Shown piece by piece: positions 661-58,768 of a stretch of 64,000 nucleotides of DNA. Position numbers and translations under genes: made by a program. This DNA is from Octopus sinensis (lineage: Eukaryota): assembly GCF_006345805.1 (NCBI RefSeq), contig NC_043007.1:56668001-56732000 (forward strand). Direction: 5' to 3'. The stretch's first letter is position 1, and each line of letters opens with the position of its first letter. The notes under the pieces are model-generated. The model had not been told where the DNA came from. It ran no database searches and saw only the letters and a list, made by a program, of their open reading frames with translations.

Positions 661-1171
661 TGTATATTGTGTGGTGTTTACCAAACTATCGGATGTTGTT
701 ATATACTGCCGTCAATACGCGCTTCGCATTGTTTAAGTTTTCGAATGATGCCACTCCGCTGGCTAGGCGGGCAGACAGACATTGCCCCTGAACAGAACGG
801 CAGTCCATCACAGGGTTACCATCCATTTACAGCTGAGTGAACTGAAACAGCATGAAATGAAGTGTTTTGTTCAAGACCACAACGCACTGCCGGTTTGGGA
901 GTCGAAACTACGATCTTGCGATCGCGACCGCAACAAGCTTACCACTATCCCACGCGACTTTGCACACACAAACACACGCGCGCGCGCATGTTTGTTATTT
1001 GTGTGTGTGTTATATTCTTTTTCCATTTCCTTCCTGTATTACCTGTGTGTGTAAAATCAGTTGATGTATCTTTCTAACGAACCTTTCTGCTTTGTCCAAT
1101 GATGAATGGTTCACACGGTATATACATACATATATATGTCTGTGTGTGTATGTATGAATGTATGTATGTAT

Positions 1172-1221
<50 letters not shown>

Positions 1222-1225
<4 letters not shown>

Positions 1226-1455
1226 GTATATCCATCAGAAATACCAGCGTACCAAAGAAAATGTTAAGCGTATATGTGTATGTATGATAAAGAATGTATG
1301 TGTGCATGTAGGTAAGTACTTACACGTATATATACATATTTATATATAAATACACGTACGTCATAAATCATAAATATGTTAATATATTCATATATGTATA
1401 TATATATATATATACATATATATACGCATATATCTATCTTTCTGTCTCTTTCTCA

Positions 1456-1497
<42 letters not shown>

Positions 1498-1771
1498 GTA
1501 TACACACACACACACGCACACACAAGTCAGTGTACATTCGTATTAATGCGTATAACAAATATTTTAAACCTGTTCATAACTACTTCAAAATCATAAGAGT
1601 AAATTCAATAATAATCTTTTTTATAATAATTATTATTACGAGTGTTGTATCTGCTGCTTGAGCTGCTGTTTTTCATCGTCCTCGTCATTTTATTTATTTT
1701 TGTAATGTTTTTTGGGTTTTTTTAAGTTTCGCCTTCTCTCCGTCCCCTTATCATCATCATCATCGTCGTCG

Positions 1772-1803
<32 letters not shown>

Positions 1804-1818
1804 ATCATCATCATCATT

Positions 1819-1849
<31 letters not shown>

Positions 1850-2400
1850 CCAACATCATCAATAACAACAACATTCCTCCTATTATCAATATCACATTTA
1901 TCACTCCTTCCACCTTTACCATAGTCATTATCATCATCATCATCATCGTCATCGTCATCATCATCGTCATCGTCATCATCATCGTCATCGTCATCATCAT
2001 CGTCATCGCTACTGTCAACTAACTAATATATAAGTGTTAATTCCCACGCGTTCTATCCACTTATACATCAACATCTTTGTTTATTTTTTATATTTATCTT
2101 ATTTGTTTTATCGTTATCATAATCATTTATAGCCATCATATTCCCTTCTCTTTCATACCACCTACTCCTTTACCCCTCAATCTTCAACCCCCTCCCGCAC
2201 TAACATCTCCCAACGCCCACCTCAGCATTACAAACAATATAATGAACCTCCTTCTCTCGCAGAGAAATACATACATACACACACACATACACACACATAC
2301 ATACACACTTACATATATACATGCTTATATACATATGTATATATATATCTATATGTGTGCATGTATGTGTGTATGCATGTAAGTTTGTATCTATATATAT

Positions 2401-2447
<47 letters not shown>

Positions 2448-2677
2448 GTATATCCATCAGAAATACCAGCGTACCAAAGAAAATGTTAAGCGTATATGTG
2501 TATGTATGATAAAGAATGTATGTGTGCATGTAGGTAAGTACTTACACGTATATATACATATTTATATATAAATACACGTACGTCATAAATCATAAATATG
2601 TTAATATATTCATATATGTATATATATATATATATACATATATATACGCATATATCTATCTTTCTGTCTCTTTCTCA

Positions 2678-2727
<50 letters not shown>

Positions 2728-2993
2728 ACACACACACACACGCACACACAAGTCAGTGTACATTCGTATTAATGCGTATAACAAATATTTTAACCTGTTC
2801 ATAACTACTTCAAAATCATAAGAGTAAATTCAATAATAATCTTTTTTATAATAATTATTATTACGAGTGTTGTATCTGCTGCTTGAGCTGCTGTTTTTCA
2901 TCGTCCTCGTCATTTTATTTATTTTTGTAATGTTTTTTGGGTTTTTTTAAGTTTCGCCTTCTCTCCGTCCCCTTATCATCATCATCATCGTCG

Positions 2994-3025
<32 letters not shown>

Positions 3026-3628
3026 ATCATCATCATCATTATCATCATCATCATCATCATCATCATTATCATCATCATCATCATCACCAACATCATCAAT
3101 AACAACAACATTCCTCCTATTATCAATATCACATTTATCACTCCTTCCACCTTTACCATAGTCATTATCATCATCATCATCATCGTCATCGTCATCATCA
3201 TCGTCATCGTCATCATCATCGTCATCGTCATCATCATCGTCATCGCTACTGTCAACTAACTAATATATAAGTGTTAATTCCCACGCGTTCTATCCACTTA
3301 TACATCAACATCTTTGTTTATTTTTTATATTTATCTTATTTGTTTTATCGTTATCATAATCATTTATAGCCATCATATTCCCTTCTCTTTCATACCACCT
3401 ACTCCTTTACCCCTCAATCTTCAACCCCCTCCCGCACTAACATCTCCCAACGCCCACCTCAGCATTACAAACAATATAATGAACCTCCTTCTCTCGCAGA
3501 GAAATACATACATACACACACACACATACACACACATACATACACACTTACATATATACATGCTTATATACATATGTATATATATATCTATATGTGTGCA
3601 TGTATGTGTGTATGCATGTAAGTTTGTA

Positions 3629-3660
<32 letters not shown>
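1222..3660. repeat. Tandem duplication of a ~1.22-1.24 kb microsatellite-rich segment (2 copies)
   Basis: tacgtatatccatcagaaataccagcg recurs at ~1222 and ~2445. The duplicated ORFs 1712/2937, 1722/2947 and 2077/3314 confirm it. Breakpoints lie in (TA)n. Confidence 0.92.
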
Positions 3661-3664
<4 letters not shown>

Positions 3665-5252: not shown

Positions 5253-5410
5253 GAATTCCGCCGAGGTCGACTTTGCCATTCATCCTTTCGGGGTCGATAA
5301 ATTAAGTACCAGTTACGCACTGGGGTCGATGTAATTGACTTAATCTGTTTGTCTGTCCTTGTTTGTCCTCTCTGTGTTTAGCCCTTGTGGGTAGTAAAGA
5401 AATAGGTATT
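5253..5410 (+). mobile_element. tRNA-derived SINE (octopus-type), 5'-truncated
   Basis: aattccgccgaggtcgactttgcc...gtcgataaattaagtaccagt core shared with more than 10 other copies in the window. Confidence 0.85.
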
Positions 5411-5993
5411 TGTTTGGGATGGGGTTTATACAATATGCGTAATAAAGAGATGCGTAGTAAAAAGAAAAAGATGAGTGACTCGGCACCAGACAGATCTAAA
5501 AAGAGGTCTGTGTTGTCGCGATTCCAGATGTAGCGTGAGGAGACCCCTTAGGTATCGGCCAGTTTTGGAGTATTTTGCAGAGCAGCTTAATGCCTATGAG
5601 TCGGGTAGACTTTCGATGGATACCGTCTAGGATTTCTGTGTGCAGTGGCAGCAGAGTGTCCATTACGGTAATGTTATTTTATCGTGGGTATCACTTGAGC
5701 TTTGAAAGTAACAGCCCCGGGTTTTGTGAAGCTAATTCATTTTAAGGTAATTTACTGTATACTTGTTATGTTGTTGTTATTGCTTTCTTTCAAATTGAAA
5801 GGAAATAGGATTGCTCGTTGTTCATAGCATTTCCTAAGACCAATACAGTGAATTCAGAACGATTACGAACTGACCTGCGGAGAAACACTAGACCTGGACT
5901 GCCTGGCGAGCTGGAGTTTACCTTCTTACTCTATCTAGGGTTGATATATTGCCCTATAAGTAGTCGATTACGTTAATTTTAAGGACGAGACTC

Positions 5994-6105: not shown

Positions 6106-6910
6106 GAGTGAGAGAGCAGTGCATGCCATCAAAGTGACACTGGGGTAAAATATACGAAGCAAAGTATACCCATCATGACTACAAGTCTGATAAGGGTACA
6201 CCAGGCACATGCATCACAATTATATGTGTGCGACATGGTGATTTCATATCAACATAAATACTTATTTCTTTACTACCCACAAGGGGTTAAACACAGAGAG
6301 GACAAACAAGGACAGACAAACGGCTTAAGTTGATTATATCGACCCCAGTGCGTAACTGGTACTTAATTTATCGACCCCGAAAGGATGAAAGGCAAAGTCG
6401 ACTTCGGCGGAATTTGAACTCAGAATGTAACGGCAAACGAAATACCGCAAGGCATTTCGCCCGGCGTGCTAACGTTTCTGCCAGCTCGCCGCCTTTATAT
6501 CAACATAAATACCGCATGACCTTGCAGGTGCGGCCCAGTAAGAATTTTCGTCAGATCGAGTAGCCCATCCTGCTCAAAAGGTCCCTGAATAAGTGTTGTT
6601 TAAGGATGTTGAACGACACATCCATGTTTCCAGAGGTGAATTATCCAGAACCCAAAGAATTCCTTCCAATACATGGTTATGATGGTCCCCCACTACTTCT
6701 GCTCGTGATCAGAGATGCACATATCGTCAACCACTAAGGGATGTGCTCATCTGGTTAAGCTCAAGCAACTGACAAATAAATCTGTGGTATTAAGCAGAAT
6801 ATTTGCAGTAGCCCATTTTTTATACCTAGACAAAACAATATACACGATAACATTACCAATCAGTTCAGATGAGGAGCCACGAGATCCACTGCCTAGTACT
6901 GTATCAGGGC
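6106..6910. mobile_element. Unclassified interspersed repeat (family F) flanked by (ATT)n on both sides, interrupted by a SINE
   Basis: 6106-6260 and 6535-6610 match the reverse complement of 54800-55036. 6740-6910 matches 8750-8926. Confidence 0.7.
6262..6496 (-). mobile_element. Full-length tRNA-derived SINE with 16-bp target-site duplication
   Basis: Minus strand begins ggcggcgagctggcagaaacgttagc (A box) and carries gagttcaaattcc (B box). TSD atatcaacataaatac at 6246-6261 and 6497-6512. Confidence 0.9.
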
Positions 6911-11819: not shown

Positions 11820-11861
<42 letters not shown>

Positions 11862-12041
11862 TAAGCAATAAGGGTTTAGCAACGAGTTGCCTTACCACAT
11901 ACCGAATTTAGAAATAGCAGTCAAAGGGTTATAGCTATTTCTTCTACTAAAAAGGAGATCTCAGTAAAAACAGCATTGGAAGGCAGGACACAAACAGGTA
12001 AGAGAGAATGAATTGACTGCATTTATCATACATTTTTTTAG

Positions 12042-12150
12042 TTATCCACGGACGTACGTTTCGAAATCAAGTTTTTAGGAAAGCATAAGAATTAAATATT
12101 AAATATTAAATATTCTATTTACCGAAACTTCTTTCTCTTCGCGTAGAATA
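12042..12150 (-). ncRNA. Type I hammerhead, extended helix II, core with a 1-nt deletion (CGAAGA)
   Basis: Same fold as 12641-12754, but the plus strand reads tcttcg instead of tcttcag (U4 lost; real or a consensus error). Confidence 0.6.
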
Positions 12151-12640
12151 CTATAATCATAAATGATTATATATTGAATTTTGAGATACCAGAAGGCACC
12201 AACTCAACTCAGTATCAGAGCGAGCTAGAATCCGCAACCTGGTATCACCGAATTCAATTTGTGAATGAAACGATTGTGTTCCAACAGCCCCTTCCCACCC
12301 GCGTGTAGCCAAAACAGATGCTGTGGTCCATCTACTGAGATAAAATATGGTATCCGTAATAATGAAGGGTGAAATAATTAATTTGGAAAAAATTTCAATT
12401 ACACCAAGTAGTCTTCGGCATGTAAAAGCCTCATTCGAGGAAAATTAAGTAATACTAAGCAATAAGGTTTTAGCAACGAGTTGCCTTACCACATACCGAA
12501 TTTAGAAATAGCAGTCAAAGGGTTTTATAGCTATTTTTCTACTCTAAAAAGGGAGATCTCAGTAAAAACAGCATTTGGAAGGCAGACACAAACAGGTAAG
12601 AGAGAATGAATTGACTGCAATCTATCATACATTTTTTTAG

Positions 12641-12754
12641 TTATCCACGGACGTACGTTTCGAAATCAAGTTTTTAGGAAAGCATAAGAATTAAATATTA
12701 AATATTAAATAATTCTATCTTACCGAAACTTCTTTTCTCTTCAGCGTAGAATAA
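12641..12754 (-). ncRNA. Type I hammerhead ribozyme with ~75-nt extended helix II
   Basis: Minus: ttattctacg-CTGAAGA-gaaa...tttc-GAAAC-GTAC-GTC^cgtggataa. Helix II pairs gaaa/tttc, aagttt/aaactt and agaatt/aattct. Confidence 0.8.
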
Positions 12755-13735
12755 TATAATCATAAATGATTATATATTGAATTTTGAGATACCAGAAGGC
12801 ACCAACTCAACTCAGTATCAGGCGAGCTAGAATCCGCAACTGGTATCACCGAATTCAATTTGTGAATGAAACGATTGTGTCAACAGCCCCTTCCCACCCG
12901 CGTGTAGCCAAAACAAGATGCTGTGGTCATCTACTGAGATAAAATATGGTATCCGTAATAATGAAGGGTGAAATTAATTAATTTGGAAAAATTATCAATT
13001 ACAACAAGTAGTCTTCGGCATGTAAAAGCCTCATTCGAGGAAAATTTAAGTAATACTAAGCAATAAGGGTTTAGCAACGAGTTGCCTTACCACATACCGA
13101 ATTTAGAAATAGCAGTCAAAGGGTTATAGCTATTTCTTCTACTAAAAAGGGAGATCTCAGTAAAAACAGCATTTGGAAGGCAGACACAAACAGGTAAGAG
13201 AGAATGAATTGACTGCAATCTATCATACATTTTTTAGTAGAAGAAATAGCTTTTTAGTAGAAGAAATAGCTATAACCCTTTGACTGCTATTTCTAAATTC
13301 GGTATGTGGTAAGGCAACTCGTTGCTAAACCCTTATTGCTTAGTATTACTTAAATTTTCCTCGAATGAGGCTTTTACATGCCGAAGACTACTTGGTGTAA
13401 TTGATAATTTTTCCAAATTAATTAATTTCACCCTTCATTATTACGGATATATATATATATATATATATTAAGGTATGTAGAAAAATACAACATGGACAAG
13501 AACGTATAACTCTTAGAAGACGATACAATAAACATGGACAGGACATTCGAACCCCTCAGTCTTCAGTCAAGAACCGGATCATCGTAGTAATTTCGGCTGA
13601 TTAATCTTGAGATTACTAGATCACGGCCAGCCCTCCAAGAAAAACTAAGCAACGAGCATTAGAAAAACTAAGCTAAATATATATATACAAACACATGTAA
13701 GTATGTATATATGTATATATATACATACATGTATG

Positions 13736-13780
<45 letters not shown>

Positions 13781-14130
13781 TATATATGTAAATATATATA
13801 TGTATTTATATATGTAATATGTATATGTATATATATGTATAGTATATATATGTATATGTATTTCCCTTTGCAAATACTGACAGGACACAGATAGTGTGTC
13901 TATGGCCAGCTGAGGAGTGTGTCCTCCTGGGGCTAAAAACTACAGTAGCATCCACCCTTAGGGTTAGCCATATTTGAATGGCAAAAATACGTCACGATGT
14001 GTTACCGCTACTGTATATAACTCACTTTGATATTTATCATTGTTTGATTTCACTTTTTCAATATCAGCGACAGTGGGCGCTGGAAAAAGTATAAGTATTT
14101 GTGAAGGAAATCTAATTCTCGGCGACAACT

Positions 14131-14189
14131 GTGATTGTCACACGCTGACGAGAGGTCAATACCTCGAAACTCGAGTCCGTGTGTATCAT
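14131..14189 (+). ncRNA. Type I hammerhead ribozyme, copy 1 (intact)
   Basis: gtgat-tgt-cacacg CTGACGA gaggt caat acctc GAAAC TCGA GTC^cgtgtg-t-atcat; predicted cleavage after 14177. Confidence 0.92.
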
Positions 14190-14482
14190 AAGTTGAAGAC
14201 GGGAAGGATGACTTCCCTTTGCAAATACTGACAGGACACAGATAGTGTGTCTATGGCCAGCTGGAGGAGTGTGTCCTCCTGGGGCTAAAAACTACAGTAG
14301 CATCCACCCTTAGGGGTTAGCCATATTGAAATGGCAAAAATACGTCACGATGTGTTACGCTACGGTATATAACTCACTTTGATATTTATCATTGTTTGAT
14401 TTCACTTTTTCAATATCAGCGACAGTGGGCGCTGGAAAAAGTATAAGTATTTGTGAAGGAAATCTAATTCTCGGCGACAACT

Positions 14483-14540
14483 GTGATTGTCACACGCTGA
14501 CGAGAGGTCAATACCTCGAAACTCGAGTCGTGTGTATCAT
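14483..14540 (+). ncRNA. Type I hammerhead ribozyme, copy 2
   Basis: Core identical; one C missing at the GTC/cgtgtg junction. Confidence 0.8.
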
Positions 14541-14833
14541 AAGTTGAAGACGGGAAGGATGACTTCCCTTTGCAAATACTGACAGGACACAGATAGTGTG
14601 TCTATGGCCAGCTGGAGGAGTGTGTCCTCCTGGGGCTAAAAACTACAGTAGCATCCACCCTTAGGGTTAGCCATATTGAAATGGCAAAAATACGTCACGA
14701 TGTGTTACCGCTACTGTATATAACTCACTTTGATATTTATCATTGTTTGATTTCACTTTTTCAATATCAGCGACAGTGGGCGCTGGAAAAAGTATAAGTA
14801 GTTGTGAAGGAAATCTAATTCTCGGCGACAACT

Positions 14834-14892
14834 GTGATTGTCACACGCTGACGAGAGGTCAATACCTCGAAACTCGAGTCCGTGTGTATCAT
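14834..14892 (+). ncRNA. Type I hammerhead ribozyme, copy 3 (intact)
   Basis: Identical to copy 1; predicted cleavage after 14880. Confidence 0.92.
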
Positions 14893-15181
14893 AAGTTGAA
14901 GACGGGAAGGATGACTTCCCTTTGCAAATACTGACAGGACACAGATAGTGTGGTCTATGGCCAGCTGGAGGAGTGTGTCCTCCTGGGGCTAAAAACTACA
15001 GTAGCATACCACCCTTAGGGGTTAGCCATATTGAAATGGCAAAAATACGTCACGATGTGTTACCGCTACTGTATATACTACTTGATATTTATCATTGTTT
15101 GATTTAACTTTTCAATATCAGCGACAGTGGGCGCTGGAAAAATATAGTATTGTGAGGAAAATATAATTCTCGGCGACAACT

Positions 15182-15237
15182 GTGATGTCACGCTGACGAG
15201 AGGTCAATACTCGAAAAACTCGAGTCCGTGTGATCAT
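15182..15237 (+). ncRNA. Type I hammerhead, copy 4 (several indels)
   Basis: CTGACGA retained; helix II 3' strand actc, GAAAAAC and a shortened helix I. Confidence 0.6.
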
Positions 15238-15529
15238 AAGTTGAAGACGGGAAGGATTGACTTTCCTTTGCAAATACTGACAGGACACAATAGTGTGTCT
15301 ATGGCCAGCTGGAGGAGGGTGTCCTCTGGGGCTAAAAACTACAGTAGCATCCACACTTAGGGGTTAGCCATATTGAAATGGCAAAAATACGTCACGATGT
15401 GTTACCGCTCTGTATTAACTCACTTTGATTATATCATTGTTTGATTTCACTTTTTCAATATCAGGACAGTGGGCGCTGGAAAAAAAAAGTATAAAGTATT
15501 GGTGAAGGAATCTAATTTCGGCGACAACT

Positions 15530-15587
15530 GTGATTGTCACACGCTGACGAGAGGTCAATACCTCGAAACTCGAGTCCGGTGTATCAT
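15530..15587 (+). ncRNA. Type I hammerhead ribozyme, copy 5
   Basis: Core, helix II and helix III intact; one T missing in the helix I 3' strand. Confidence 0.8.
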
Positions 15588-15763
15588 AAGTTGAAGACGG
15601 GAAGGATGACCTCCCTTTGCAATACTGAAGGACACAGATAGTGTGTCTATGGCCAGCTGGAGGAGTGTGTCCTCTGGGGCTAAAAACACAGTAGCATCCA
15701 CCCTTAGGAGTTAGCCATATTGAAATGGCAAAAATAGTCACTATATATATATATATATAATAT

Positions 15764-16058
15764 ATTTCAACAATTGAGGGCAAAATTAATTAATTATTAA
15801 TCAATTTCACCAAGGTTCAGTATGCAAAGGGACCATTCAGGCGAATTCAAATTATTACATTATATTAAAAGGGCTTAGTAAAATAAATTACTTTGCCGCA
15901 TACTGAACTCATTAGAAATAGACTAAAAAACTTTTTAAAGCTATTCTAATACTTAAAGAAAATCTTCTCATATATAGTGTTTGCTTAATTCAACTCACAA
16001 AAGTTTGGGGTAAGGACATCTTACCCCCAATTATTTTACTAAGCCCTTTTATATAATA
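15764..16058. mobile_element. Terminal fragment of a divergent relative of the 595-bp family with an inverted short end
   Basis: Homologous to 29634-29967 and to ataaggg...ccacatac...ttagaaatagcag of the 595-bp unit. 16031-16058 inverts about 15860-15888. (TA)n flanks. Confidence 0.7.
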
Positions 16059-21137: not shown

Positions 21138-21830
21138 TTGGGTTGGCAACTAAGTTCCCGACGTTTTTTTTAAATTTAAATTTTTTAAACGGTTTAATAA
21201 AAAATAACAACTAATTAATCAATAATGTATTTACCCTTGTTGTTTACAACTTCTTCCCAACGTTTAACAAGATTTTCAATACCGCTTTGGTATTGCCGTG
21301 CAGCAAAAGAACTCTGCCGATTAGGTCTTTTCTCTTGAATAGCCGTGTTGAGCCGTTCCATCTGTTGAACGTAGAGTTTCACGTTGACCGTTTGGTTCCG
21401 TTCAAGAAATTCGTAATGGATAATCCCTTCCAAATCCCACCATAAGCACAACATCGTTTTATGCGGATGAAGATCTTGTTTCAGGCACGGTGTCGCTTGT
21501 TTACCGGGCCTAAGCCATTGCTTACGCTGCTTCATATTGATGTACAGTAACGTCGCCAGTAACGATTCGGTAAAGAAATTGTTGCTTATGTCCATGAGTG
21601 GAGCGGTGACGAGCAAGCAAACCAGCGGAGATTATGGTTCCTTAATTTTTGTTGTTGTCACTTCTGAACCTTTCCCATCGAGTGAAGATGTTTCTCTATA
21701 GCAGTGTGGGAGCATTCCATTTTCTCCAGTTCCTTCGTTGTCTGACAAGAATTTTCGTGCAAAAGTTGGTTTAACCGCTCTTCATAGAACTCAACTGGAC
21801 GGCCAGAACGAGGCGCATTTTTTTAGGTCA
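21138..21830 (-). pseudogene. Mariner (DD34D-type) transposase relic with 3' TIR
   Basis: HKTMLCLWWDLEGIIHYEFL and NAPRSGRP motifs. TIR ttgggttggcaactaagtt starts at 21138 after TA. Confidence 0.85.
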
Positions 21831-21907
21831 AAATGAGGGGGGGAATTTTTAAGCAGAGATGAAACGTGGGTCCATCATTATGAGGTAGAATATATATATA
21901 TATATAT

Positions 21908-22628
21908 CAGGGGAAGTAAAAAAAATTATCCGCATTTTCGACATAACGCATCTCTATTATTGTCACACTGCTTTCTGTGTATGCGTGCTTATAGTTGGTA
22001 CTATTGTGCTCAAGTGATCGAAGTTTGATTCTACCACATAATGATGGACTCACGTTTCATCCCCTCTTAAAAATTCCTCCCCCTCATTGTTGTAGCAATC
22101 GAGTAAACGTTGGGAGACTTCAAGACGTCTGCAGTAAGCTCTCTTGGCACCCATTTTGCACAGACTTTATGAAAGCCGAGCCCATCGTGGATGATTTGAT
22201 AGGTAGAATAATGACTAATCTGCAGAGAACAAGCTACCTCAGTGGTGGAGTTTGACGTGCTCCCTACTTCCTCTTCGTGCGTCACGCTTGTCCGGCCACT
22301 TTTAAACTTCTCGATCCACTCATACACACTTGTACGCAGTAGTGCATTGTCCCCGTATTGAGCTAAAAGACTCCGATGAATTTCAGCACCTGACACACCT
22401 TTCGACCAGAGAAATCGGATCACTGCTCTTTGTTCTTTAGTGCACAGTACTAGTGGAGCGGTCATGCTTATACTGTAAGGCCAGAAAGAAAAATGGCGAG
22501 ATCAGGCTCAAACTTTGATCACGTGACCATAATAATACCAACTATAAGCACACATACGCAGAAGGCAGTGTGACAATAATACACATATCTTATGGCGAAA
22601 GTGCAGATCATTTTTGACTTCCTCTCAT
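21908..22628 (-). mobile_element. Internally deleted mariner with ~130-bp terminal inverted repeats
   Basis: ORF EQRAVIRFLWSKG...SVYEWIEKFKSGRTSV...WVPRELT (mariner HTH, WVPHEL motif). 21908-22040 is an imperfect inverted copy of 22500-22628. TA flanks. Confidence 0.8.
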
Positions 22629-22849: not shown

Positions 22850-23500
22850 TGTTCGAGGGTGGTGACCCCGAAAAGATGAAAGGCAAAGTCGACCCTGGTG
22901 GAATTTGAACTCAAAACGTGAAGATGGACAAAATGCCGCTAAGCATTTTGTCCAGGATGCTAACGATTCTGCCAGCTCGCCGCCTGCTTTTTCCAAATTG
23001 ATTTCAAAGTTTGGCAGAAGGCTAGCAACTTCGAGAAAGGTGGTAAATCGATTACATCGACCCCAGTGCTCAACTGGTACTTTCTTATCACTAATATTAA
23101 GTAGCAGTATCAAGTGGTGAGCTAGCAGAATCGTTGCCAGGCCGGGCGAAATGCTTAGCGGCATTTCGTCCGTCTTTACGTTCTGAGTTCAAATTCCGCT
23201 GAGGTCGACTTTGCCTTTCATCCTTCGCGGTCGGTAAAATATGTACCTAGTTGAATACTGAGCTCGACGTAATCGACTTACCCACTTCTCCGACATGGCT
23301 GGCCTTGTGCCAAAATTTAAATCAATATTAAATATTAGAAGCGACAAGCTAGTAGAGTCGTTAGCAAGCCAGACGAAATTCCGTTAAGCTCGTCGGACGA
23401 AATGCCGCTAACCTCGCTCTGAGTTCAAATTCCAAAGTGGTCGACTTTCCATTCACCTCCCAAGAAATTGTTACCCTTGTGCCAAAATTTGAAATAAATA
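22850..23500. mobile_element. Cluster of tRNA-derived SINE copies in both orientations
   Basis: Repeated gagttcaaattcc/gaatttgaactc and gtcgactttgcc cores. Confidence 0.8.
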
Positions 23501-29312: not shown

Positions 29313-29633
29313 ATAATATAATAATATATAAATATAAAATATATGCATATATACATACATATATGTACATACCTACATCTATATGTATATATTCATGCAT
29401 ATATGGGTACAGGAGATAAAAAAAACGTTGAACACAATGAGAAACGAAAACATAAAAGCAAAAGCATGACAACGAACTTTTTTCAAACAACGTAAAAACA
29501 GAGTACAAGAGATACAAAAAGAATATTCCCCTTCTTAATATATAAATATGCATATATTTATATATTATTTATATTAGTATATGATTGACCGCCACGCATC
29601 CTTTTGCAAGTATATATATAATATATATATATA

Positions 29634-29958
29634 ATTTCAACAATTGAGGGTAAAATTAATTAATTATTAATCAATTTCACCAAGTATTCAGTATGTAAAG
29701 GGACCATTATAGGCGAATTCAAAATATTACATTATATATAAGGGCTTAGTAAAATAAATTACTTTGCCACATACTGAACTCATTAGAAATAGCAGCTAAA
29801 GAAATTTCTTCAGCTATTTCTAATACTTAAAGAAGATCTCTCTGAGAGAGATCTTCTTTAAGTATTAGAAATAGCTGAAGAAATTTCTTTAGCTGCTATT
29901 TCTAATGAGTTCAGTATGTGGCAAAGTAATTTATTTTACTAAGCCCTTATATATAATG

Positions 29959-29967
<9 letters not shown>
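29634..29967. mobile_element. Fold-back terminal fragment of the 595-bp-related family; near-perfect palindrome with ~122-bp arms centred on 29844
   Basis: 29723-29843 pairs with 29845-29967 apart from one TA indel; (TA)n on both flanks. Confidence 0.9.
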
Positions 29968-35498: not shown

Positions 35499-38269
35499 TA
35501 GTTAGTTAGTTAGTTAGTTAATTTGGCTCAAAAGCAAACAGCAAGGCCATGTAGGGGGACATTGAGTTAAGTACAGGGTGGTGTTCATGTAAAGAGTTCA
35601 GGCCACTTGAGGTCAAGGGAGGCTTTGAACAAAGCGGTCGTCGGCATCTTCACCATCTCGTCTGGCAGCTTGTTCCACGGATCCGCAACCTGGACGGAGA
35701 AAGCTCCTCTCCTTCGATTGAGATGAAATCGTCGCAGGTAGAGCTTTTCGGAATGACCCCGCAGCCGACGCTCCGGAGCAGGAGTGAAGAACAGCTCTTT
35801 CGAGAGGTTACACTTCCCGCTTATGATGTTGTGGGCGAGAATGAGATCACCACGGCGGCGGCGGCGTTTTTCAAGAGAATAAAGGTCGAGCGTCCTCAGC
35901 CTTTCTTCGTAGGACAAATTTTTGAGACCATGAACCATGCGGGTAGCCAGCCTCTGGACTCTTTCGAGATGCTGTATGTCTTTGAGAAGATAAGGAGAAG
36001 AGGCTTGAATCCCATACTCCAATATGGGTCTCACCAGCGTGACATAGAGTGGCAGGAATATGGCTGCTGTGAGCATTCCGAATGACCGTCGAATCAAAAA
36101 CAGAATTCCGCGCGCTTTGTTGGCAGCATGGACGCACTGGGCCGAAGGCGAAAAGGAGGAATCTACCAAGATACCCAGGTCCTTTACTTGATCGGTCCTC
36201 TCCAGCAGCAGACGACCGGCTCGAAATCAAGTTGAGTTGCAGGAGTAGAGCCGACAGGCAGATGACAGCACTTTGACACGTTCAGACACAGGTCCCAATC
36301 GTTAGACCACTTCCAAATTTGGTGGAGGCATCGACGAAGATCCTCTATACTACCGCGAGGAGCGACCAGTTTGATATCGTCGGCAAATAGAAGGGTTTGT
36401 TGCGTGAGGTCGTCGGGCAAGTCATTTATGAAGACTAAGAAAACAAGGGCCCAAGCACTGAACCTTGAGGCACGCCACTGCTCGCACTGGAGACGTCGGA
36501 CCGCGAACCATTAACTTGAACTTGGAAGGAGCGATCTGAGAGGAAGGCACCAACCCATCGTACAATATCCGGATGGAAACTATATGCTTGAAGCTTGACA
36601 AGTAGTAGGCGGTGGTTTACCGAGTCAAAAGCTTTGGCAAAGTCCAATAAAACGATGTCAACAGCATCACTATCATCGAGGATGCGCGTCACCAATTCTT
36701 CCATTACTAGTAAGTTGGTCAAGCATGATCTCTTCGGCACGAAGCCGTGTTGGGAATCAGTGATCGAGGCTGTGTTTAGGAGGTGGAGCATCATACTTTT
36801 CTTAAGGATGGTTTCGAACATCTTGCTGATTATTGATGTAAGGGAAACCGGTCGGTAGTTAAGCGGGTCTTCGCGGCTCCCTTTCTTGAAAATTGGGCAG
36901 ATTATCGCTGTTCTCCAGTCTGCAGGTATAACACCCGTCGCCAATGACATATTGAATAGTCGTGTTAAGGGCTCGCAGATGACCGGAGCCAACGCTTTGA
37001 TAACCCGTGGGTGTATGCGTCAGGGCCGTGACCCTTGTTGACATCGAGGCCTTGAATAACACACTTGACTTCGTCCCGCGTGATGATCAATCGAAGCATT
37101 GGAGGTACCGATCTATCAAATGGAGGGGGTCACGACCATCATCTTGTTTGAAAATAGTTGAAAAAGCCTCAGCAAATAATTGACTCTGTTGATAAGGGTC
37201 CTCAATCGATACGCCTGTTGAGTCTACCAACGTTGCAATCTGGTTGTTCAAGCGGGAATTCCGCTGGACATGGGCAAAGAAGGTTTTTGGATTGCTACTG
37301 GCATTGCCGCGATTTTGTATTCATAACTGAAGCGTTCTTTCTTTTCAATTTTCACGGCTCGGTCTCGTTGAGTTTTGTACACCTCAAAAGCTGCAGTCGA
37401 ATCCAGATTTTTGAATTCAGCCCAAGCAATATCTCTGAGTCGACGTTCTCGTTTAACCTTCTTCGTCACCCAGGGCTTTTGTTTCTTCCTCTTGGGAAGC
37501 CCAACGGGAACTGCCTGGTCAGTCAAACAGATTACATATGCTTTGAGGGATGACCATAGTTCGTCAATTGAGGACAACGTCATCAGGGATCGCCAGTCCA
37601 GAAGCGCGGAAGCCTCGGTTAGAATTTCAAGATTAATTGCAGAGAAGACTCTACGTGGCAGCGAAGTAATCGTGGGCGTGGAAAAATTTGTGTGCATGAC
37701 GAACTTCAGGACCGCATGATCACTCTTGGCAAGAGGGGCGCACACAGATACGTCTAACACTGATCTTGGATAGCGGGAGAATACCAGATCTAGCATAGAT
37801 GGCCGCTGCCCAGACCGATGCCTAGTCGGATATTCAACATGTTGCGATAGAAAACAATCTTCAGCCACGTCAAGAAGGGCCTGGCCGAACCGGGAAGATG
37901 TTGTACAACTTGATGCGGGCCAATCGATCGTGGGAGCGTTGAAGTCGCCTAGTACCAAGCAGTCATGCGAAGCTGAAACGAATCTTATCGCTTCGAGTAG
38001 ATGAGCATCGTCCTGGGGGTCGGCTAGAGGCGGCCTGTAGACAGCCAACACGGGCAGGCAAAACTCAGATAGGCTCAGCTTGCAATAGACGGCATCGAAT
38101 TTGGTTGTAGGTTGAGCATTTGTGGGTAGAATACCGCAGGACGGTTTGTGCTCAAACTTAACATACACAGCAACACCTCCACCTCGCCTTTTTCCTCTGT
38201 CACATCTGAAAAGGACGTAGCCCTGCAGGTGGATTTCTGAGTCCTTTACTGCTGGAGTCAGCCAAGTCT
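35499..38269 (-). mobile_element. CR1/L2-type LINE ORF2 (APE endonuclease + reverse transcriptase), 5'-truncated, frameshifted, with (AACT)n 3' tail
   Basis: ETWL, VYRPP, GDFNAP, LDLVF, YRPVSLTS, QHGF, DFAKAFDSV, GVPQGSVLGP and LFADD motifs across ORFs 37248-38168, 36435-36992, 36184-36420 and 35585-36169. Tail (tagt)n at 35499-35520. Confidence 0.95.
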
Positions 38270-39493
38270 CATATGACTATAAAATAAGTTTTGTAGGTGT
38301 ACAAGTCTCCATACTCTTTATGATTAACATTAATATGTGTGAGTACATATATATATATAAATATATATATGTACTCACACATATTAATGTATATATAAAT
38401 ATATATATTATAAGGAAAATATGTATGTATGCATGTATGTATATATGTATATATGTATATAGTAGATATGTATATATATGTATATATGTATATATGTATA
38501 TATGTATGTATATATTATATATATATATAATACATATATATCTACATATACATATATATATATATATATGCGTGTATATATTAATCATATAACATACATA
38601 CATACACACATTCTAGTATGATGGAGAAGTGAAAACTGAGGAGAATGCAGTTTCTAACTTTCAAGGAAAGGGTGTTATTCCTAAAAGAAAATTGTGTTAA
38701 GAGGGACAGTGTGTATATGTTCTTTTCGCTCATGTAATTTCGGTGACGAAACCTGAAGTACTGTTTGGGTTGTTTATTTTTGTTTTTGTAATTTTTTGCA
38801 AAATATTTTCGTTGAGGAATTTTTCCCTTTTAAAATTATTTACATGCCTCTTCGACCGTTTCATGTGACTTCATTCGTTAAAACTTCAAAGCTTCTTACA
38901 TCTTCGTCGCCATAATGTTTTGCTTTTATTTTGTTTATTAAACTTCATCGTAATTATGTTTCTTCTTTCATTTTGTGATAGCTATCACGTAGAAAATGTC
39001 ACCTTCCAAACCCTGTTTCCTGACAAGGAAAAGTTATCAAACAATTTTTCTAGAACAAGTGAATAACAAAACTGGGTTTATCTTGAAAAATCACATCGAA
39101 TTACCAAATTTGAACATGTTCACCTAATTTGAAGATTCCAATATCTGTGGTTACAACAGAAAATACCTGAATGTATATTTGGTCATCCTCGAAATGGATG
39201 CACCTTCATGAAGCTGCACCGACAATATTATAAGGTCGCATTTGCACAGTGAGAGTAGTCGCTGCAGCGGAAATAGTCATTATAATATGTGACATATGAC
39301 TATAAAATAAGTTTTGTAGGTGTACAAGTCTCCATACTCTTTATGATTAACATTAATATGTGTGAGTACATATATATATAAATATATATATATAAGGTAA
39401 AATATGTATGTATGCATGTATGTATATATGTATATATGTATATATGTATATATGTATATATATGTATATATGTATATATGTATATTGTATGTA

Positions 39494-39578
<85 letters not shown>

Positions 39579-40520
39579 ATACATAATTATATATATATAT
39601 ATATGCGTGTATATATAATCATATAACATACATACATACACACATTCTAGTATGATGGAGAAGTGAAAACTGAGGAGAATGCAGTTTCTAACTTTCAAGG
39701 AAGGGTGTTATTCCTAAAAGAAAATTGTGTTAAGAGGGACAGTGTGTATATGTTCTTTTCGCTCATGTAATTTCGGTGACGAAACCTGAAGTACTGTTTG
39801 GGTTGTTTATTTTTGTTTTTGTAATTTTTTGCAAAATATTTTCGTTGAGGAATTTTTCCCTTTTAAAATTATTTACATGCCTCTTCGACCGTTTCATGTG
39901 ACTTCATTCGTTAAAACTTCAAAGCTTCTTACATCTTCGTCGCCATAATGTTTTGCTTTTATTTTGTTTATTAAACTTCATCGTAATTATGTCTTCTTTC
40001 ATTTTGTGATAGCTATCACGTAGAAAATGTCACCTTCCAAACCCTGTTTCCTGACAAGGAAAAGTTATCAAACAATTTTTCTAGAACAAGTGAATAACAA
40101 AACTGGGTTTATCTTGAAAAATCACATCGAATTACCAAATTTGAACATGTTCACCTAATTTGAAGATTCCAATATCTGTGGTTACAACAGAAAATACCTG
40201 AATGTATATTTGGTCATCCTCGAAATGGATGCACCTTCATGAAGCTGCACCGACAATATTATAAGGTCGCATTTGCAACAGTGAGTAGTCGCTGCAGCGG
40301 AAATAGTCATTATAATATGTGACATATGACTATAAAATAAGTTTTGTAGGTGTACAAGTCTCCATACTCTTTATGATTAACATTAATATGTGTGAGTACA
40401 TATATATATATAAATATATATATATAAGGTAAAATATGTATGTATGCATGTATGTATATATGTATATATGTATATATGTATATATGTATATATATGTATA
40501 TATGTATATATGTATATATG

Positions 40521-40594
<74 letters not shown>

Positions 40595-40658
40595 TATATA
40601 CATATATATATATATATATGCATGCGTGTATATATAATCATATAACATACATACACAC
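38270..40658. repeat. Tandem array of a ~1.03-kb unit (2.3 copies) containing an internal (TA)n/(TATATG)n tract
   Basis: catatgactataaaataag at 38270, 39293 and 40323. Confidence 0.92.
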
Positions 40659-41177
40659 ACACACATATATAAAAGAAAACAAGTGTAACCAGCAGTCGCT
40701 TTCGGGTGAGTATGACTCAGTAACACGCACCATGCTTTCGAGTCTCTCACACTTGAGCCAACGGGACATCAAGGATTTTATAAGTAAAGGGGCTAGAAGG
40801 ATACATCGACATCTGGCTGGTAGCCATTACAGCCGAGTAGATTGGCGCAATATGAAACTCATGGCTTCACACTTACAAACCTATGTGCGTATGCATATAT
40901 ACATATATACCTATACATACGTATATACATATATGCATGCACGCATACATACAAACATACATACACCCACACACGTACATACATACGTACAAACATACAT
41001 ACATACATACATACATACATACATACATACATACATACATACATACATACATACATACATACAGGTGGGCATCATGACACCAGAAGAGATGGACGTGTCC
41101 TAAACCCACGAAAATTTAAGTAATGTAGAGCTGAATCACTTCTTTGTAAATGTGTAATACCCGGGTGTGCGTGCGGC

Positions 41178-42628: not shown

Positions 42629-42643
42629 CATCATCATTATTAA

Positions 42644-42851
42644 GGCGGTGAGCTAGCAGCAACGTTAGCTCCCCAGTCAAAATACTTTGCAGAATTTCTT
42701 CCGGTTCTTTACATTCTGAGTTCAAATTCCGCCGAGGTCGACTTCGCCTTTCATCTTTTCGGATCGATAAAATAAGTACCAGTTGAGCACTGGGATCTAT
42801 GTAATCGACTTGCCCCAAAATTCCAGTCCTTGTGCGTGTAGGAGAAATATT

Positions 42852-51274: not shown

Positions 51275-51717
51275 CAAAGCCCGAAATTTTGGAGGTGGGG
51301 CAGTCGATTAGATAGACCACAGTACGCAACTGGTACTTGGGACAAACAAGGACAGACAAACGGATTAAGTCGATTATATCGACCCTAGTGCGTAACTGGT
51401 ACTTAATTTATCGACACCGAAAGGACGATAGGCAAAGTCGACCTCGGCGGAATTTGAACTCAGAACGTAACGGCGGACGAAATACCTATTTCTTTACTAC
51501 CCACAAAGGGTTAAACACAGAGTGGACAAACAAGGACAGACAAACGGATTAAGTCGATTGCATCAACCCCAGTGCGTAACTGGTACTTAATTTATCGACC
51601 CCGAAAGGACGAAAGGCAAAGTCGACCTCGGCGGAATTTGAACTCAGAACGTAGCGGCAGACGAAATACGGCTACGGATTTCGCCCGGCGTGCTAACGTT
51701 TCTGCCAGCTCGCCGCC
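51275..51717 (-). mobile_element. tRNA-derived SINE with internally duplicated body
   Basis: Minus start ggcggcgagctggcagaaacg; ggacaaacaaggacagacaaacggattaagtcg occurs twice. Confidence 0.85.
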
Positions 51718-51768
51718 TTATGTTTCTTTTTATTCTACCTTAGGCCTTTACGTCTGACTGTTTGTCTG

Positions 51769-58277: not shown

Positions 58278-58768
58278 TTATAATTCTCGTTCTGAGTTCA
58301 AATTCCGCCGAAGTCGACTTTGCTTTTCATCCTTTTGGGGTCGATGAATTAAGTACCAGTGAAACACTTGAATCAATGTGATTGACTTATCCTCTCCCTC
58401 AAACTGGCTACCCTTATGGCAAACATTGAAACCATTATTGTTGTTGTTATTTGTATAATTGTCAAAGCTCCTAGCTGATAGAATCGTTAGCACACTGGGC
58501 GAAATGCCCGGCGATATTTCAATCGTCTTTATGTTCTAGTTCAAATTCTGCCGTGGTCGAGTTTGCCAGTCATCCTGCCGGAGTCGATAAAATAAGTACC
58601 AGTTGAGTACTGGGGTCGATGTAATCGACTGTACCCCTCGCTCAAATTTCAGGTCTTGTGCCTTTATTTAGAAAGGAATATTATTATTATTGTTGATGTT
58701 GTTGTTGTTGCTGCTGCTATTGTTGTTGTTGTTGCTGTTGTTGTTGTTGCTGCTGCTGCTGCTGCTGC

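What the first reader, a model, noticed from the sequence alone, without database searches (positions are those of the whole stretch)
13862..15741. Retrozyme-like tandem array: five type I hammerhead ribozymes in head-to-tail 351-nt monomers
Seen: a ~351-nt unit repeated 5.4 times with no genuine ORF. Each full unit has cacacg-CTGACGA-gaggt-caat-acctc-GAAAC-TCGA-GTC^cgtgtg, with helix I extended past an internal loop (gtgat/atcat), which could dock with loop II. Established: tandem 170-400 nt monomers with one type I HHR each define metazoan non-LTR retrozymes (newt satellite 2, Schistosoma Sm-alpha and relatives). These self-cleave to monomers, circularise and are thought to be mobilised by Penelope-like RTs. 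Inference: this is a young cephalopod retrozyme family producing ~351-nt circular RNAs. I cannot verify whether it is already described.
Basis: partly seen in the sequence, partly recalled or inferred. Interest (0 to 1): 0.9.

Follow-up and report, generated by a model that had tools for sequence, protein, structure and literature searches.

The report
Hammerhead ribozyme retrozyme array, octopus-type genome
A 1.9-kb stretch holds 5.4 head-to-tail copies of a 351-base non-coding unit, each carrying a self-cutting hammerhead RNA motif; it is a clean new example, in an octopus-type genome, of a known class of small mobile elements thought to spread through circular RNAs.

Summary
Tandem Repeats Finder gives 13862-15741, period 351, 5.4 copies. 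Each unit junction carries a type I hammerhead (HHR) on the + strand. Rfam's Hammerhead_1 model scores the best copies at 32.2 bits, just under its 34-bit cut-off (E 1.7e-5 for the 2.6 kb searched). A strict structural descriptor found the two exact copies and nothing in 300 shuffles of the whole window.

The motif is the canonical metazoan type I HHR. Helix I has 6 bp and continues past an internal loop. Helix II has 4-5 bp with an AAUA-type loop. Helix III has 2 bp capped by the palindromic loop UCGA. Folding predicts that two neighbouring copies pair into a double hammerhead.

The unit is non-coding, 43% GC, and folds stably as a circle. The array sits inside a (TA)n microsatellite. The window shares interspersed repeats with Octopus bimaculoides, so the cephalopod call is supported.

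Every sequence-level criterion of metazoan non-LTR retrozymes is met. Cleavage, circular RNA, other genomic copies and mobilisation could not be tested. Verdict: real, and a new member of a known kind.

The parts
13862..15741 (+). Tandem array, 5.4 units of ~351 nt (retrozyme-type repeat)
   Evidence: TRF; self-alignment of the units
13862..14177 (+). Unit 0: 5'-truncated, starts at unit position ~37 and ends at a predicted cleavage site
   Evidence: 98.7% identical to the consensus
14178..14529 (+). Unit 1, 352 nt, cleavage site to cleavage site
   Evidence: 99.4% identical to the consensus
14530..14880 (+). Unit 2, 351 nt
   Evidence: 99.4%; linear fold -115.3 kcal/mol, z -4.4
14881..15226 (+). 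Unit 3, 346 nt, many 1-nt indels
   Evidence: 94.7%
15227..15576 (+). Unit 4, 350 nt, many 1-nt indels
   Evidence: 94.4%
15577..15741 (+). Unit 5: 3'-truncated, ends at unit position ~170
14139..14183 (+). Type I hammerhead, intact. Helix I CACACG/CGUGUG, core CUGACGA...GAAA, helix II GAGGU-CAAU-ACCUC, helix III AC-UCGA-GU. Predicted cut after C at 14177.
   Evidence: Rfam RF00163 32.2 bits, E 1.7e-5; strict descriptor
14126..14196 (+). Extended hammerhead. Helix I continues past an internal loop (UUGU / U) as CAACUGUGAU / AUCAU-A-AGUUG.
   Evidence: MFE folds
14492..14535 (+). Hammerhead copy lacking the C right after the cleavage site (first pair of helix I lost)
   Evidence: Rfam 25.5 bits; alignment
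14842..14886 (+). Type I hammerhead, intact. Predicted cut after 14880.
   Evidence: Rfam 32.2 bits; descriptor
15187..15232 (+). Degenerate hammerhead copy with five indels: helix I 5' strand -3 nt, helix II -1 nt, GAAAC read as GAAAAAC
   Evidence: not reported by Rfam
15539..15582 (+). Hammerhead copy with a 1-nt deletion in the 3' strand of helix I
   Evidence: Rfam 32.1 bits
13677..13861 (.). Left flank: (TA)n/(TATG)n microsatellite abutting the array
   Evidence: TRF; sequence
15742..15765 (.). Right flank: (TA)n run abutting the array. It is also the terminal TA run of a foldback/MITE-like element (15742-15990).

Best explanation
This is one genomic locus of a non-LTR retrozyme, a small non-coding, non-autonomous retroelement, in an octopus-type genome.

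Proposed mechanism:
1. The + strand is transcribed as a multimer. The promoter is unknown.
2. Helix III of each hammerhead is only A-U plus C-G, capped by the palindromic loop UCGA, so a single motif is unstable. Two neighbouring motifs pair their ACUCGAGU stretches into an 8-bp shared helix III, forming a double hammerhead. Each then cuts after GUC.
3. [quoted passage not shown]
4. Helix I and its extension hold the two ends together in a stable, branched fold, so a tRNA ligase of the RtcB type can close the circle.
5. The circle, or the multimer, is reverse-transcribed by a Penelope-like element (PLE) enzyme. The tandem cDNA is inserted at a (TA)n microsatellite, giving an array that starts and ends at arbitrary positions within the unit.

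Shown here: the array, the motif, the predicted folds, the lack of coding capacity, the (TA)n context and the host lineage. Inferred: transcription, cleavage, circularisation, reverse transcription and integration.
For: - Array and units.
- Motif: Hammerhead_1 matches on the + strand only and no other ribozyme on either strand. The strict descriptor gave 2 hits against 0 in 300 shuffles.
- Architecture: it equals the 'canonical metazoan type I HHR' as defined in PMC4209133, namely helix I 6 bp, helix II 4 bp, and helix III 1-2 bp capped by a small palindromic loop that works as a dimer in tandem repeats.
- Dimer prediction: the isolated 45-nt HHR fold is -8.7 kcal/mol against an alternative MFE of -14.5. 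Co-folding two 71-nt segments gives the double hammerhead as the MFE, -53.1 against 2 x -24.2. In a 504-nt two-motif transcript the double-hammerhead fold is within 2.2 kcal/mol of the MFE.
- Monomer stability: the linear fold is -115.3 kcal/mol with z -4.4 and pairs the 5' end with the helix I strand. The circular fold is -111.3, 62.5% paired, z -4.6, GC 43%.
- Coding: no ORF over 66 aa.
- Insertion context: the array is embedded in (TA)n on both sides. TA-type runs cover roughly 5% of the window (my sum of the AT/TA rows). Naiad PLEs prefer (TA)n and occur in cephalopods (PMC8557442).
- Class definition and life cycle: PMC7229834. Derivation of retrozymes from the PLE pseudo-LTR (pLTR): bioRxiv 10.64898/2026.07.22.740005.
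- Host: repeats are shared with O. bimaculoides at 75-92% nucleotide identity.
Against: - Only one locus is visible. No second copy lies in the 64-kb window and none was found in any collection I could reach. Those collections do not hold cephalopod DNA in searchable form.
- Rfam scores fall 1.8 bits under the curated cut-off.
- Three of five motifs carry lesions, one of them severe.
- No PLE reverse transcriptase or GIY-YIG domain was found among window ORFs of 60 aa or more. The composition filter and the ORF-length limit make this a weak negative.
- No target-site duplication can be read in a microsatellite.
- No helix covariation is available within the family.
- No expression data exist.
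- The hammerhead fold is not the predicted ground state of a single motif.
Confidence: 0.75

Rival explanations
1. It is an ordinary local satellite. A 351-bp unit that happens to carry a (possibly still active) hammerhead was amplified in place by replication slippage or unequal crossing-over. No RNA circle and no retrotransposition are involved.
For: Only one locus is seen. Units 0-2 are about 99% identical while units 3-5 are about 94-95%, as expected if the left units duplicated recently in place. The same region holds other plain tandem duplications, at 11858-13235, 1121-3661 and 38270-40663. Newt satellite 2 was long described in exactly this way (PMC6155905).
Against: A complete canonical hammerhead is not expected by chance. 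The unit size, GC content, stable fold, single-strand ribozyme and microsatellite context all match elements shown elsewhere to make circular RNAs (PMC7229834). The array ends at arbitrary positions within the unit, inside a (TA)n run. Local growth after a retro-insertion is compatible with both readings.
Confidence: 0.12
2. It is the remnant of an autonomous Penelope-like element: tandemly arranged pseudo-LTRs whose reverse transcriptase ORF was lost. It would then not be a separate non-autonomous family.
For: PLE pseudo-LTRs carry type I hammerheads and PLEs insert as partial tandems, often in microsatellites (PMC4209133, PMC8557442). Retrozyme consensus sequences group with PLE pLTRs in Xenopus (10.64898/2026.07.22.740005).
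Against: Five consecutive 351-nt units lie together with no trace of an RT or GIY-YIG ORF in or beside the array. Metazoan PLE hammerheads are mostly 'minimal' variants, with helix II of 7-8 bp, helix I of 4-5 bp and almost no helix III (PMC4209133). This one is the canonical form. No inverted truncated copy lies next to the array.
Confidence: 0.08
3. It is an assembly artefact or a chance motif. The tandem array, or part of its copy number, would be produced by mis-assembly of long reads, or the hammerhead-like string would be fortuitous.
For: Differences between units are dominated by 1-nt indels: 49 gap openings against 26 mismatches in the self-alignment. That is typical of unpolished long-read consensus. 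Rfam scores are under the cut-off.
Against: The array is flanked on both sides by unique sequence and other repeats in one contig. The motif has every invariant core base plus three complementary helices, and it did not occur in 300 shuffles. Sequencing errors would blur the copies, not create the array.
Confidence: 0.03

Closest known systems
Metazoan non-LTR retrozymes (Cervera & de la Pena 2020, PMC7229834): coral ~225-245 nt, mussel ~350-390 nt, axolotl 331/353 nt
   Same: It shares tandem head-to-tail units of a few hundred nt, one type I hammerhead per unit on one strand, low GC (43%), and no ORF, LTR, PBS or PPT. The predicted circle is highly self-paired. The unit length (351) is almost that of the mussel and axolotl elements.
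   Different: There is no sequence similarity to anything retrievable, so this is a species- or lineage-specific family, as is usual for the class. The host is an octopus-type cephalopod, for which I found no published retrozyme. RNA circles and mobility are not shown here.
Newt satellite 2 / axolotl HHR_Amex1 hammerhead (Epstein & Gall 1987; Forster et al. 1988; as summarised in PMC6155905 and PMC7229834)
   Same: Helix III is very weak and capped by a palindromic tetraloop, which predicts action as a double hammerhead. Helix I has an internally looped extension. Loop 2 is of the ...AAUA type and aligns with the Rfam type I consensus.
   Different: Helix III reads AC-UCGA-GU here. Helix II is GAGGU/ACCUC (5 bp possible) and core position 7 is C. 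The paper states that most invertebrate retrozyme HHRs have a firmer helix III and cut well as monomers, so this one looks like the amphibian style in an invertebrate.
Schistosoma Sm-alpha and Dolichopoda pDo500 satellite hammerheads
   Same: Both are invertebrate tandem repeats carrying a canonical type I hammerhead with loop-loop docking between helices I and II (PMC6155905).
   Different: The unit sequences and sizes differ. This comparison rests on the literature only; no sequence comparison was run here.
Minimal hammerheads in Penelope-like element pseudo-LTRs (Cervera & de la Pena 2014, PMC4209133)
   Same: They are type I, have a palindromic 15.2-16.2/loop 3, are predicted to work as dimers, and have tandem and microsatellite-associated insertions.
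   Different: The PLE variants have a long helix II (7-8 bp), a short helix I (4-5 bp) and almost no helix III, and they flank a ~3-kb RT-EN ORF. None of that applies here.

Membership tests
Hammerhead ribozyme, type I (Rfam RF00163; canonical metazoan form as defined in PMC4209133) | Invariant core C3 U4 G5 A6 N7 G8 A9 ... G12 A13 A14, the A15.1-U16.1 pair, and cleavage-site H17 | tested here: met
   CUGACGA ... GAAA ... GUC is present in all five copies. One copy has GAAAAAC in place of GAAAC.
Hammerhead ribozyme, type I (Rfam RF00163; canonical metazoan form as defined in PMC4209133) | Three helices with helix I open: helix I ~6 bp, helix II ~4 bp, helix III 1-2 bp with a small palindromic loop | tested here: met
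   Helix I is CACACG/CGUGUG, helix II is GAGGU/ACCUC with loop CAAU, and helix III is AC/GU with loop UCGA. This is exact in 2 copies and has 1-nt lesions in 2 others.
Hammerhead ribozyme, type I (Rfam RF00163; canonical metazoan form as defined in PMC4209133) | Score at or above Rfam's curated gathering cut-off (34 bits) | tested here: not met
   The best score is 32.2 bits, E 1.7e-5 in a 2.6-kb search. For comparison, one metagenomic type I HHR with the same helix III scored 34.9. A hammerhead-like family with all three helices complementary (contigs of sample Ga0126336) was not reported at E <= 0.01. The model is therefore not sensitive to all members.
Hammerhead ribozyme, type I (Rfam RF00163; canonical metazoan form as defined in PMC4209133) | Helix covariation among relatives | not testable with these tools
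   No diverged relatives of this unit could be retrieved. Across three unrelated lineages that share the ACUCGAGUC helix III, helices I and II differ in sequence but stay complementary.
Hammerhead ribozyme, type I (Rfam RF00163; canonical metazoan form as defined in PMC4209133) | Self-cleavage after H17 in Mg2+ | not testable with these tools
   This needs in vitro transcription. Folding only shows that the double-hammerhead form is the dimer MFE.
Metazoan non-LTR retrozyme (PMC7229834) | Short tandem repeats (150-450 bp units, dimers to large multimers), each with a type I HHR | tested here: met
   351 nt x 5.4 copies, with one HHR per unit junction.
Metazoan non-LTR retrozyme (PMC7229834) | Low GC (<45-50%), no LTR/PBS/PPT, no coding capacity | tested here: met
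   GC is 43%. The longest open stretch is 66 aa. There are no terminal repeats other than the tandem units.
Metazoan non-LTR retrozyme (PMC7229834) | Monomer RNA predicted to adopt a stable, highly self-paired structure | tested here: met
   Linear fold z -4.4. Circular fold -111.3 kcal/mol, 62.5% paired, z -4.6.
Metazoan non-LTR retrozyme (PMC7229834) | Expressed as linear and circular monomeric RNAs | not testable with these tools
   No transcriptome is searchable by nucleotide. Exact-ORF look-ups in public assemblies were negative, which says little.
Metazoan non-LTR retrozyme (PMC7229834) | Many dispersed genomic copies (mobility); target-site duplications when present | tested here: inconclusive
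The flanks are (TA)n on both sides, so a duplication cannot be read.
Metazoan non-LTR retrozyme (PMC7229834) | Co-occurrence with Penelope-like elements in the same genome | tested here: inconclusive
   No PLE RT or GIY-YIG was found in the window. The literature reports Naiad PLEs in Octopus spp. (PMC8557442).
Viroid-like or deltavirus-like circular RNA replicon (considered, not adopted) | Ribozymes on both polarities, and/or an antigen ORF | tested here: not met
   The hammerhead is on the + strand only, with no other Rfam ribozyme on either strand at E <= 10. There is no ORF. The array is embedded in host DNA.

The most novel reading that the evidence does not exclude
This would be an active, so far undescribed cephalopod retrozyme family that makes abundant ~351-nt circular RNAs. 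Its insertion into (TA)n would show that it borrows the TA-targeting endonuclease of Naiad- or Neptune-type Penelope-like elements. If the partner were a Naiad, which carries no hammerhead itself, retrozymes would be shown to parasitise PLEs that lack ribozymes. That would separate the hammerhead from the PLE life cycle.
Probability: 0.12. Interest if true: 0.6.

Novelty: new member of a known kind. Interest (0 to 1): 0.35.

Why it matters
If active, the element adds cephalopods to the animals that make small ribozyme-processed circular RNAs. It also provides a compact, nearly error-free template (units 0-2) for testing dimer-dependent hammerhead cleavage in an invertebrate. The clean (TA)n insertion context is a usable clue to which Penelope-like endonuclease mobilises retrozymes, a link still only inferred in the literature. 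It does not change the current picture of hammerheads or retrozymes.

Tried and rejected
1. Rfam at gathering threshold found nothing in the window. The E-value mode was needed to see the hammerheads.
2. A loose core pattern (CTGANGA...GAAA...TH) is uninformative: 14 hits against 7.2 expected. I replaced it with a helix-aware descriptor.
3. Looking for other copies through translated ORFs of the unit failed. The exact-ORF look-ups and a homology search with the 66-aa open stretch were all negative.
4. A family-specific hammerhead pattern found nothing in viral contigs or in prokaryotic genomes.
5. A metagenome scan for hammerheads with the same helix III gave 25 loci, none homologous to the unit. 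L004, L007 and L018 are CRISPR arrays hit by chance (L004 confirmed; the other two carry the same matched string and flanks). L008, L014 and L024 lack a helix I.
6. Host identification from LINE and mariner ORFs gave only weak hints. It succeeded only by fetching an O. bimaculoides locus and comparing repeats at nucleotide level.
7. Searches for a Penelope-like RT or GIY-YIG among window ORFs were negative.
8. A tRNA scan for SINE heads found none.
9. Literature searches for a cephalopod hammerhead or retrozyme, and for the motif string itself, found nothing.
10. I rejected a viroid-like or deltavirus-like origin (one-strand ribozyme, no ORF) and a chance motif.
Full report
**1. The observation**

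Tandem Repeats Finder reports one long-period array in the window: 13862-15741, period 351, 5.4 copies, 94% matches, 3% indels. Cutting after every CTCGAGTC gives units of 316 (5'-truncated), 352, 351, 346, 350 and 165 (3'-truncated) nt. The unit boundaries fall after 14177, 14529, 14880, 15226 and 15576. The unit is non-coding: no frame of a consensus trimer stays open for more than 66 codons. The only longer ORF, 122 aa at 15415-15783 on the minus strand, runs through the degenerate last units into the flank and is not conserved between units. No other copy or fragment of the unit lies elsewhere in the 64 kb.

**2. The hammerhead**

At each unit junction the + strand reads CACACG-CUGACGA-GAGGU-CAAU-ACCUC-GAAAC-UCGA-GUC-CGUGUG. 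This holds all invariant hammerhead core positions. Position 7 is free, so the C there is allowed. Helix I is open, which makes the motif type I.

Rfam at its curated cut-off reports nothing in the window. In E-value mode Hammerhead_1 (RF00163) matches full length at four places:

| Position | Bits (cut-off 34) | Note |
|---|---|---|
| 14139-14183 | 32.2 | E 1.7e-5 for the 2.6 kb searched |
| 14842-14886 | 32.2 | |
| 15539-15582 | 32.1 | |
| 14492-14535 | 25.5 | |

The fifth copy is not reported. All matches are on the + strand, and no other ribozyme family matches either strand at E <= 10.

A descriptor that demands the core, a perfect 5-bp helix I, a 4-bp helix II and a helix III finds exactly two sites, 14145-14177 and 14848-14880. 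It found none in 300 dinucleotide-preserving shuffles of the whole window on both strands.

Two copies are exact. The copy at 14492 lacks the C right after the cleavage site. The copy at 15539 lacks a U in the 3' strand of helix I. The copy at about 15187-15232 has five small indels, three bases lost from the 5' strand of helix I, one from helix II, and GAAAC reading GAAAAAC.

**3. Are the lesions real?**

Units 0-2 are 98.7-99.4% identical to the consensus, and units 3-5 are about 94-95%. The differences are dominated by single-base indels. The array's self-alignment has 26 mismatches against 49 gap openings. A neighbouring duplication (11858-12637 versus 12452-13235) shows the same pattern, with 8 mismatches and 20 gap openings. 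Ordinary divergence gives far more substitutions than indels. I therefore suspect unpolished long-read consensus errors in this repeat-rich stretch, in which case the true copies would be even more alike. This is inference. An alternative is that the left-hand units duplicated recently in place.

**4. Anatomy and predicted behaviour of the ribozyme**

- **Helix I** is 6 bp. It is followed by an asymmetric internal loop (UUGU on the 5' side, U on the 3' side) and by a further helix, CAACUGUGAU / AUCAU-A-AGUUG.
- **Helix II** is GAGGU/ACCUC with loop CAAU. If read as 4 bp with loop UCAAUA, it aligns with the CAAAUA loop of the Rfam type I consensus.
- **Helix III** is only A15.1-U16.1 and C-G, capped by UCGA. 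The stretch ACUCGAGU is therefore self-complementary.

This is the 'canonical metazoan HHR' as defined by Cervera and de la Pena: helix I 6 bp, helix II 4 bp, helix III 1-2 bp with a small palindromic loop, poorly active alone but active as a dimer when a second copy lies in tandem (PMC4209133; Forster et al. 1988 as cited in PMC6155905).

The folding results agree:

| Construct | Hammerhead form (kcal/mol) | Comparison (kcal/mol) |
|---|---|---|
| Isolated 45-nt motif | -8.7 | -14.5 (alternative MFE fold) |
| Two 71-nt segments co-folded | -53.1 (the MFE is the double hammerhead with an 8-bp shared helix III) | 2 x -24.2 (two separate monomers) |
| 504-nt transcript with two motifs 352 nt apart | -164.4 (double hammerhead) | -166.6 (MFE) |

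Tertiary contacts are not modelled, so the double hammerhead is accessible in that transcript. Cleavage itself is not shown.

**5. The unit as an RNA**

The + strand monomer folds to -115.3 kcal/mol, with z -4.4 against shuffles. Its 5' end pairs with the helix I strand near the 3' end, which places the two cleavage ends side by side. Folded as a circle it gives -111.3 kcal/mol, is 62.5% paired, and has z -4.6. The minus strand folds less well, at -95.9 kcal/mol and z -3.0. GC is 43%.

**6. Surroundings**

The array begins at unit position ~37 and ends at ~170, so its ends fall at arbitrary points within the unit. On the left it abuts a 185-bp (TA)n/(TATG)n run (13677-13861). On the right it abuts a (TA)n run (15742-15765). 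That run is also the terminal TA run of a foldback/MITE-like element that recurs at 29611-29963 and, diverged and reversed, at 13231-13467.

TA-type runs cover about 5% of the window (my sum of the AT/TA rows). Landing in one is therefore mildly unusual but not proof of targeting. A target-site duplication cannot be read in such a site.

Penelope-like elements show a strong insertion bias for microsatellites, (TA)n for Naiads, and Naiads occur in Octopus and other cephalopods (PMC8557442). I found no Penelope-like reverse transcriptase or GIY-YIG endonuclease among window ORFs of 60 aa or more. The only retroelement proteins are a frameshifted APE-type LINE at 35.6-38.3 kb and LINE tails, plus a decayed mariner at 21.2-22.5 kb.

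**7. Host**

Protein searches gave only weak hints. The mariner N-terminus is 62% identical to an Octopus bimaculoides protein. I fetched that 20.5-kb O. bimaculoides locus and compared it with the window at the DNA level:

- a 470-bp LINE fragment matches at 91.9%;
- the mariner matches at 83%;
- a SINE-like family matches in many copies at 75-85%.

Interspersed repeat families are lineage-specific, so the window comes from an octopus or a close relative. The species is not determined.

**8. Relatives**

I could not search cephalopod genomes or transcriptomes by nucleotide.

- ORF-based look-ups and a homology search with translated unit ORFs were negative.
- A family-specific pattern was absent from viral and prokaryotic collections.
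- A metagenome scan for hammerheads with the same helix III (ACUCGAGUC) returned 25 loci.

Two of the lineages found in the metagenome scan look like real type I hammerheads. One is L001, a 662-nt unit repeated 1.9 times at 100% identity, scoring 34.9 bits. The other is a large dispersed family, mostly from one sample. Their helices I and II differ in sequence from those here but remain complementary. None is homologous to the unit. Three loci are CRISPR arrays hit by chance (L004 confirmed; L007 and L018 carry the same matched string). Family-level covariation therefore remains untested.

**9. What it is**

Every sequence-level criterion given for metazoan non-LTR retrozymes is met (PMC7229834). 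These are tandem units of 150-450 bp with one type I hammerhead each, GC below 45-50%, no LTR/PBS/PPT, no coding capacity, and a stable self-paired monomer.

The proposed life cycle is taken from that paper and from the 2026 preprint that links retrozymes to PLE pseudo-LTRs (10.64898/2026.07.22.740005). It runs from multimeric transcript to hammerhead cleavage, then RtcB-type circularisation, reverse transcription by a Penelope-like element, and insertion as a tandem cDNA. None of these steps was tested here.

The main rival is a plain satellite that grew in place. It cannot be excluded from one locus, and it is partly compatible, because arrays can grow locally after insertion. A PLE pseudo-LTR remnant is less likely, because there is no ORF trace and the hammerhead is the canonical form rather than the minimal PLE form. 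Chance or artefact is very unlikely.

**10. Novelty and score**

The literature I could search holds no description of a hammerhead or retrozyme in cephalopods. However, the class is stated to occur patchily in most animal phyla, including molluscs (PMC7229834). Many canonical metazoan hammerheads have exactly this weak palindromic helix III (PMC4209133).

One modest twist stands out. The 2020 paper reports that most invertebrate retrozyme hammerheads cut well as monomers and that amphibian ones need dimers. This invertebrate element looks like the amphibian style.

This is a new member of a known kind. It is well formed and useful as a test object, but it is not surprising to a specialist. 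Interest is 0.35.

Noticed in passing
window 29611-29963; 15742-15990; 13231-13467: A foldback/MITE-like element has two inverted arms (29611-29839 and 29843-29963) bounded by (TA)n runs. A half copy lies directly right of the hammerhead array (90% identity), and a diverged reversed copy lies 400 bp to its left.
   Followed up: partly
window 5254-5411, 6256-6495, 22864-23330, 42638-42835, 51340-51719, 58290-58690: A SINE-like interspersed repeat of about 160-240 bp occurs in at least six places. The same family occurs in several copies in a 20-kb Octopus bimaculoides locus (L026) at 75-85% identity. ARAGORN finds no tRNA-like head.
   Followed up: partly
window 1121-3661; 38270-40663; 11858-13235: Three other tandem duplications have long units (about 1217, 1023 and 597 bp; 94-97% identity). 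Each is rich in microsatellites and none has a ribozyme match.
   Followed up: no
window 11858-15741: Differences between recent duplicates in this stretch are mostly 1-nt indels (gap openings outnumber mismatches about 2:1). This looks like unpolished long-read consensus error rather than divergence.
   Followed up: partly
window 35585-38276 (-); 56559-57132 (-); 21215-22501 (-): A frameshifted APE-endonuclease plus RT LINE lies at 35585-38276. A LINE 3' fragment at 56559-57132 is 92% identical at nucleotide level to O. bimaculoides. A decayed Mos1-type mariner (HTH_48 plus Transposase_1) lies at 21215-22501.
   Followed up: partly
L001 (metagenome contig Ga0049110_10014201), 1-1275: The contig is 1.9 copies of a 662-nt unit at 100% identity, with one type I hammerhead per unit at 34.9 bits, above Rfam's cut-off. 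It may be a circular hammerhead RNA/DNA or a retrozyme dimer from an unknown eukaryote.
   Followed up: no
L002, L003, L005, L006, L009-L013, L015-L017, L019-L023, L025 (mostly contigs of sample Ga0126336): A large dispersed family of single-copy hammerhead-like motifs reads AGCAA-CUGAUGAG-GUUC-ACUGAA-GAAC-CGAAAC-UCGA-GUC-UUGCU. Among the members I scanned, Rfam Hammerhead_1 does not report them at E <= 0.01 although all three helices are complementary.
   Followed up: no
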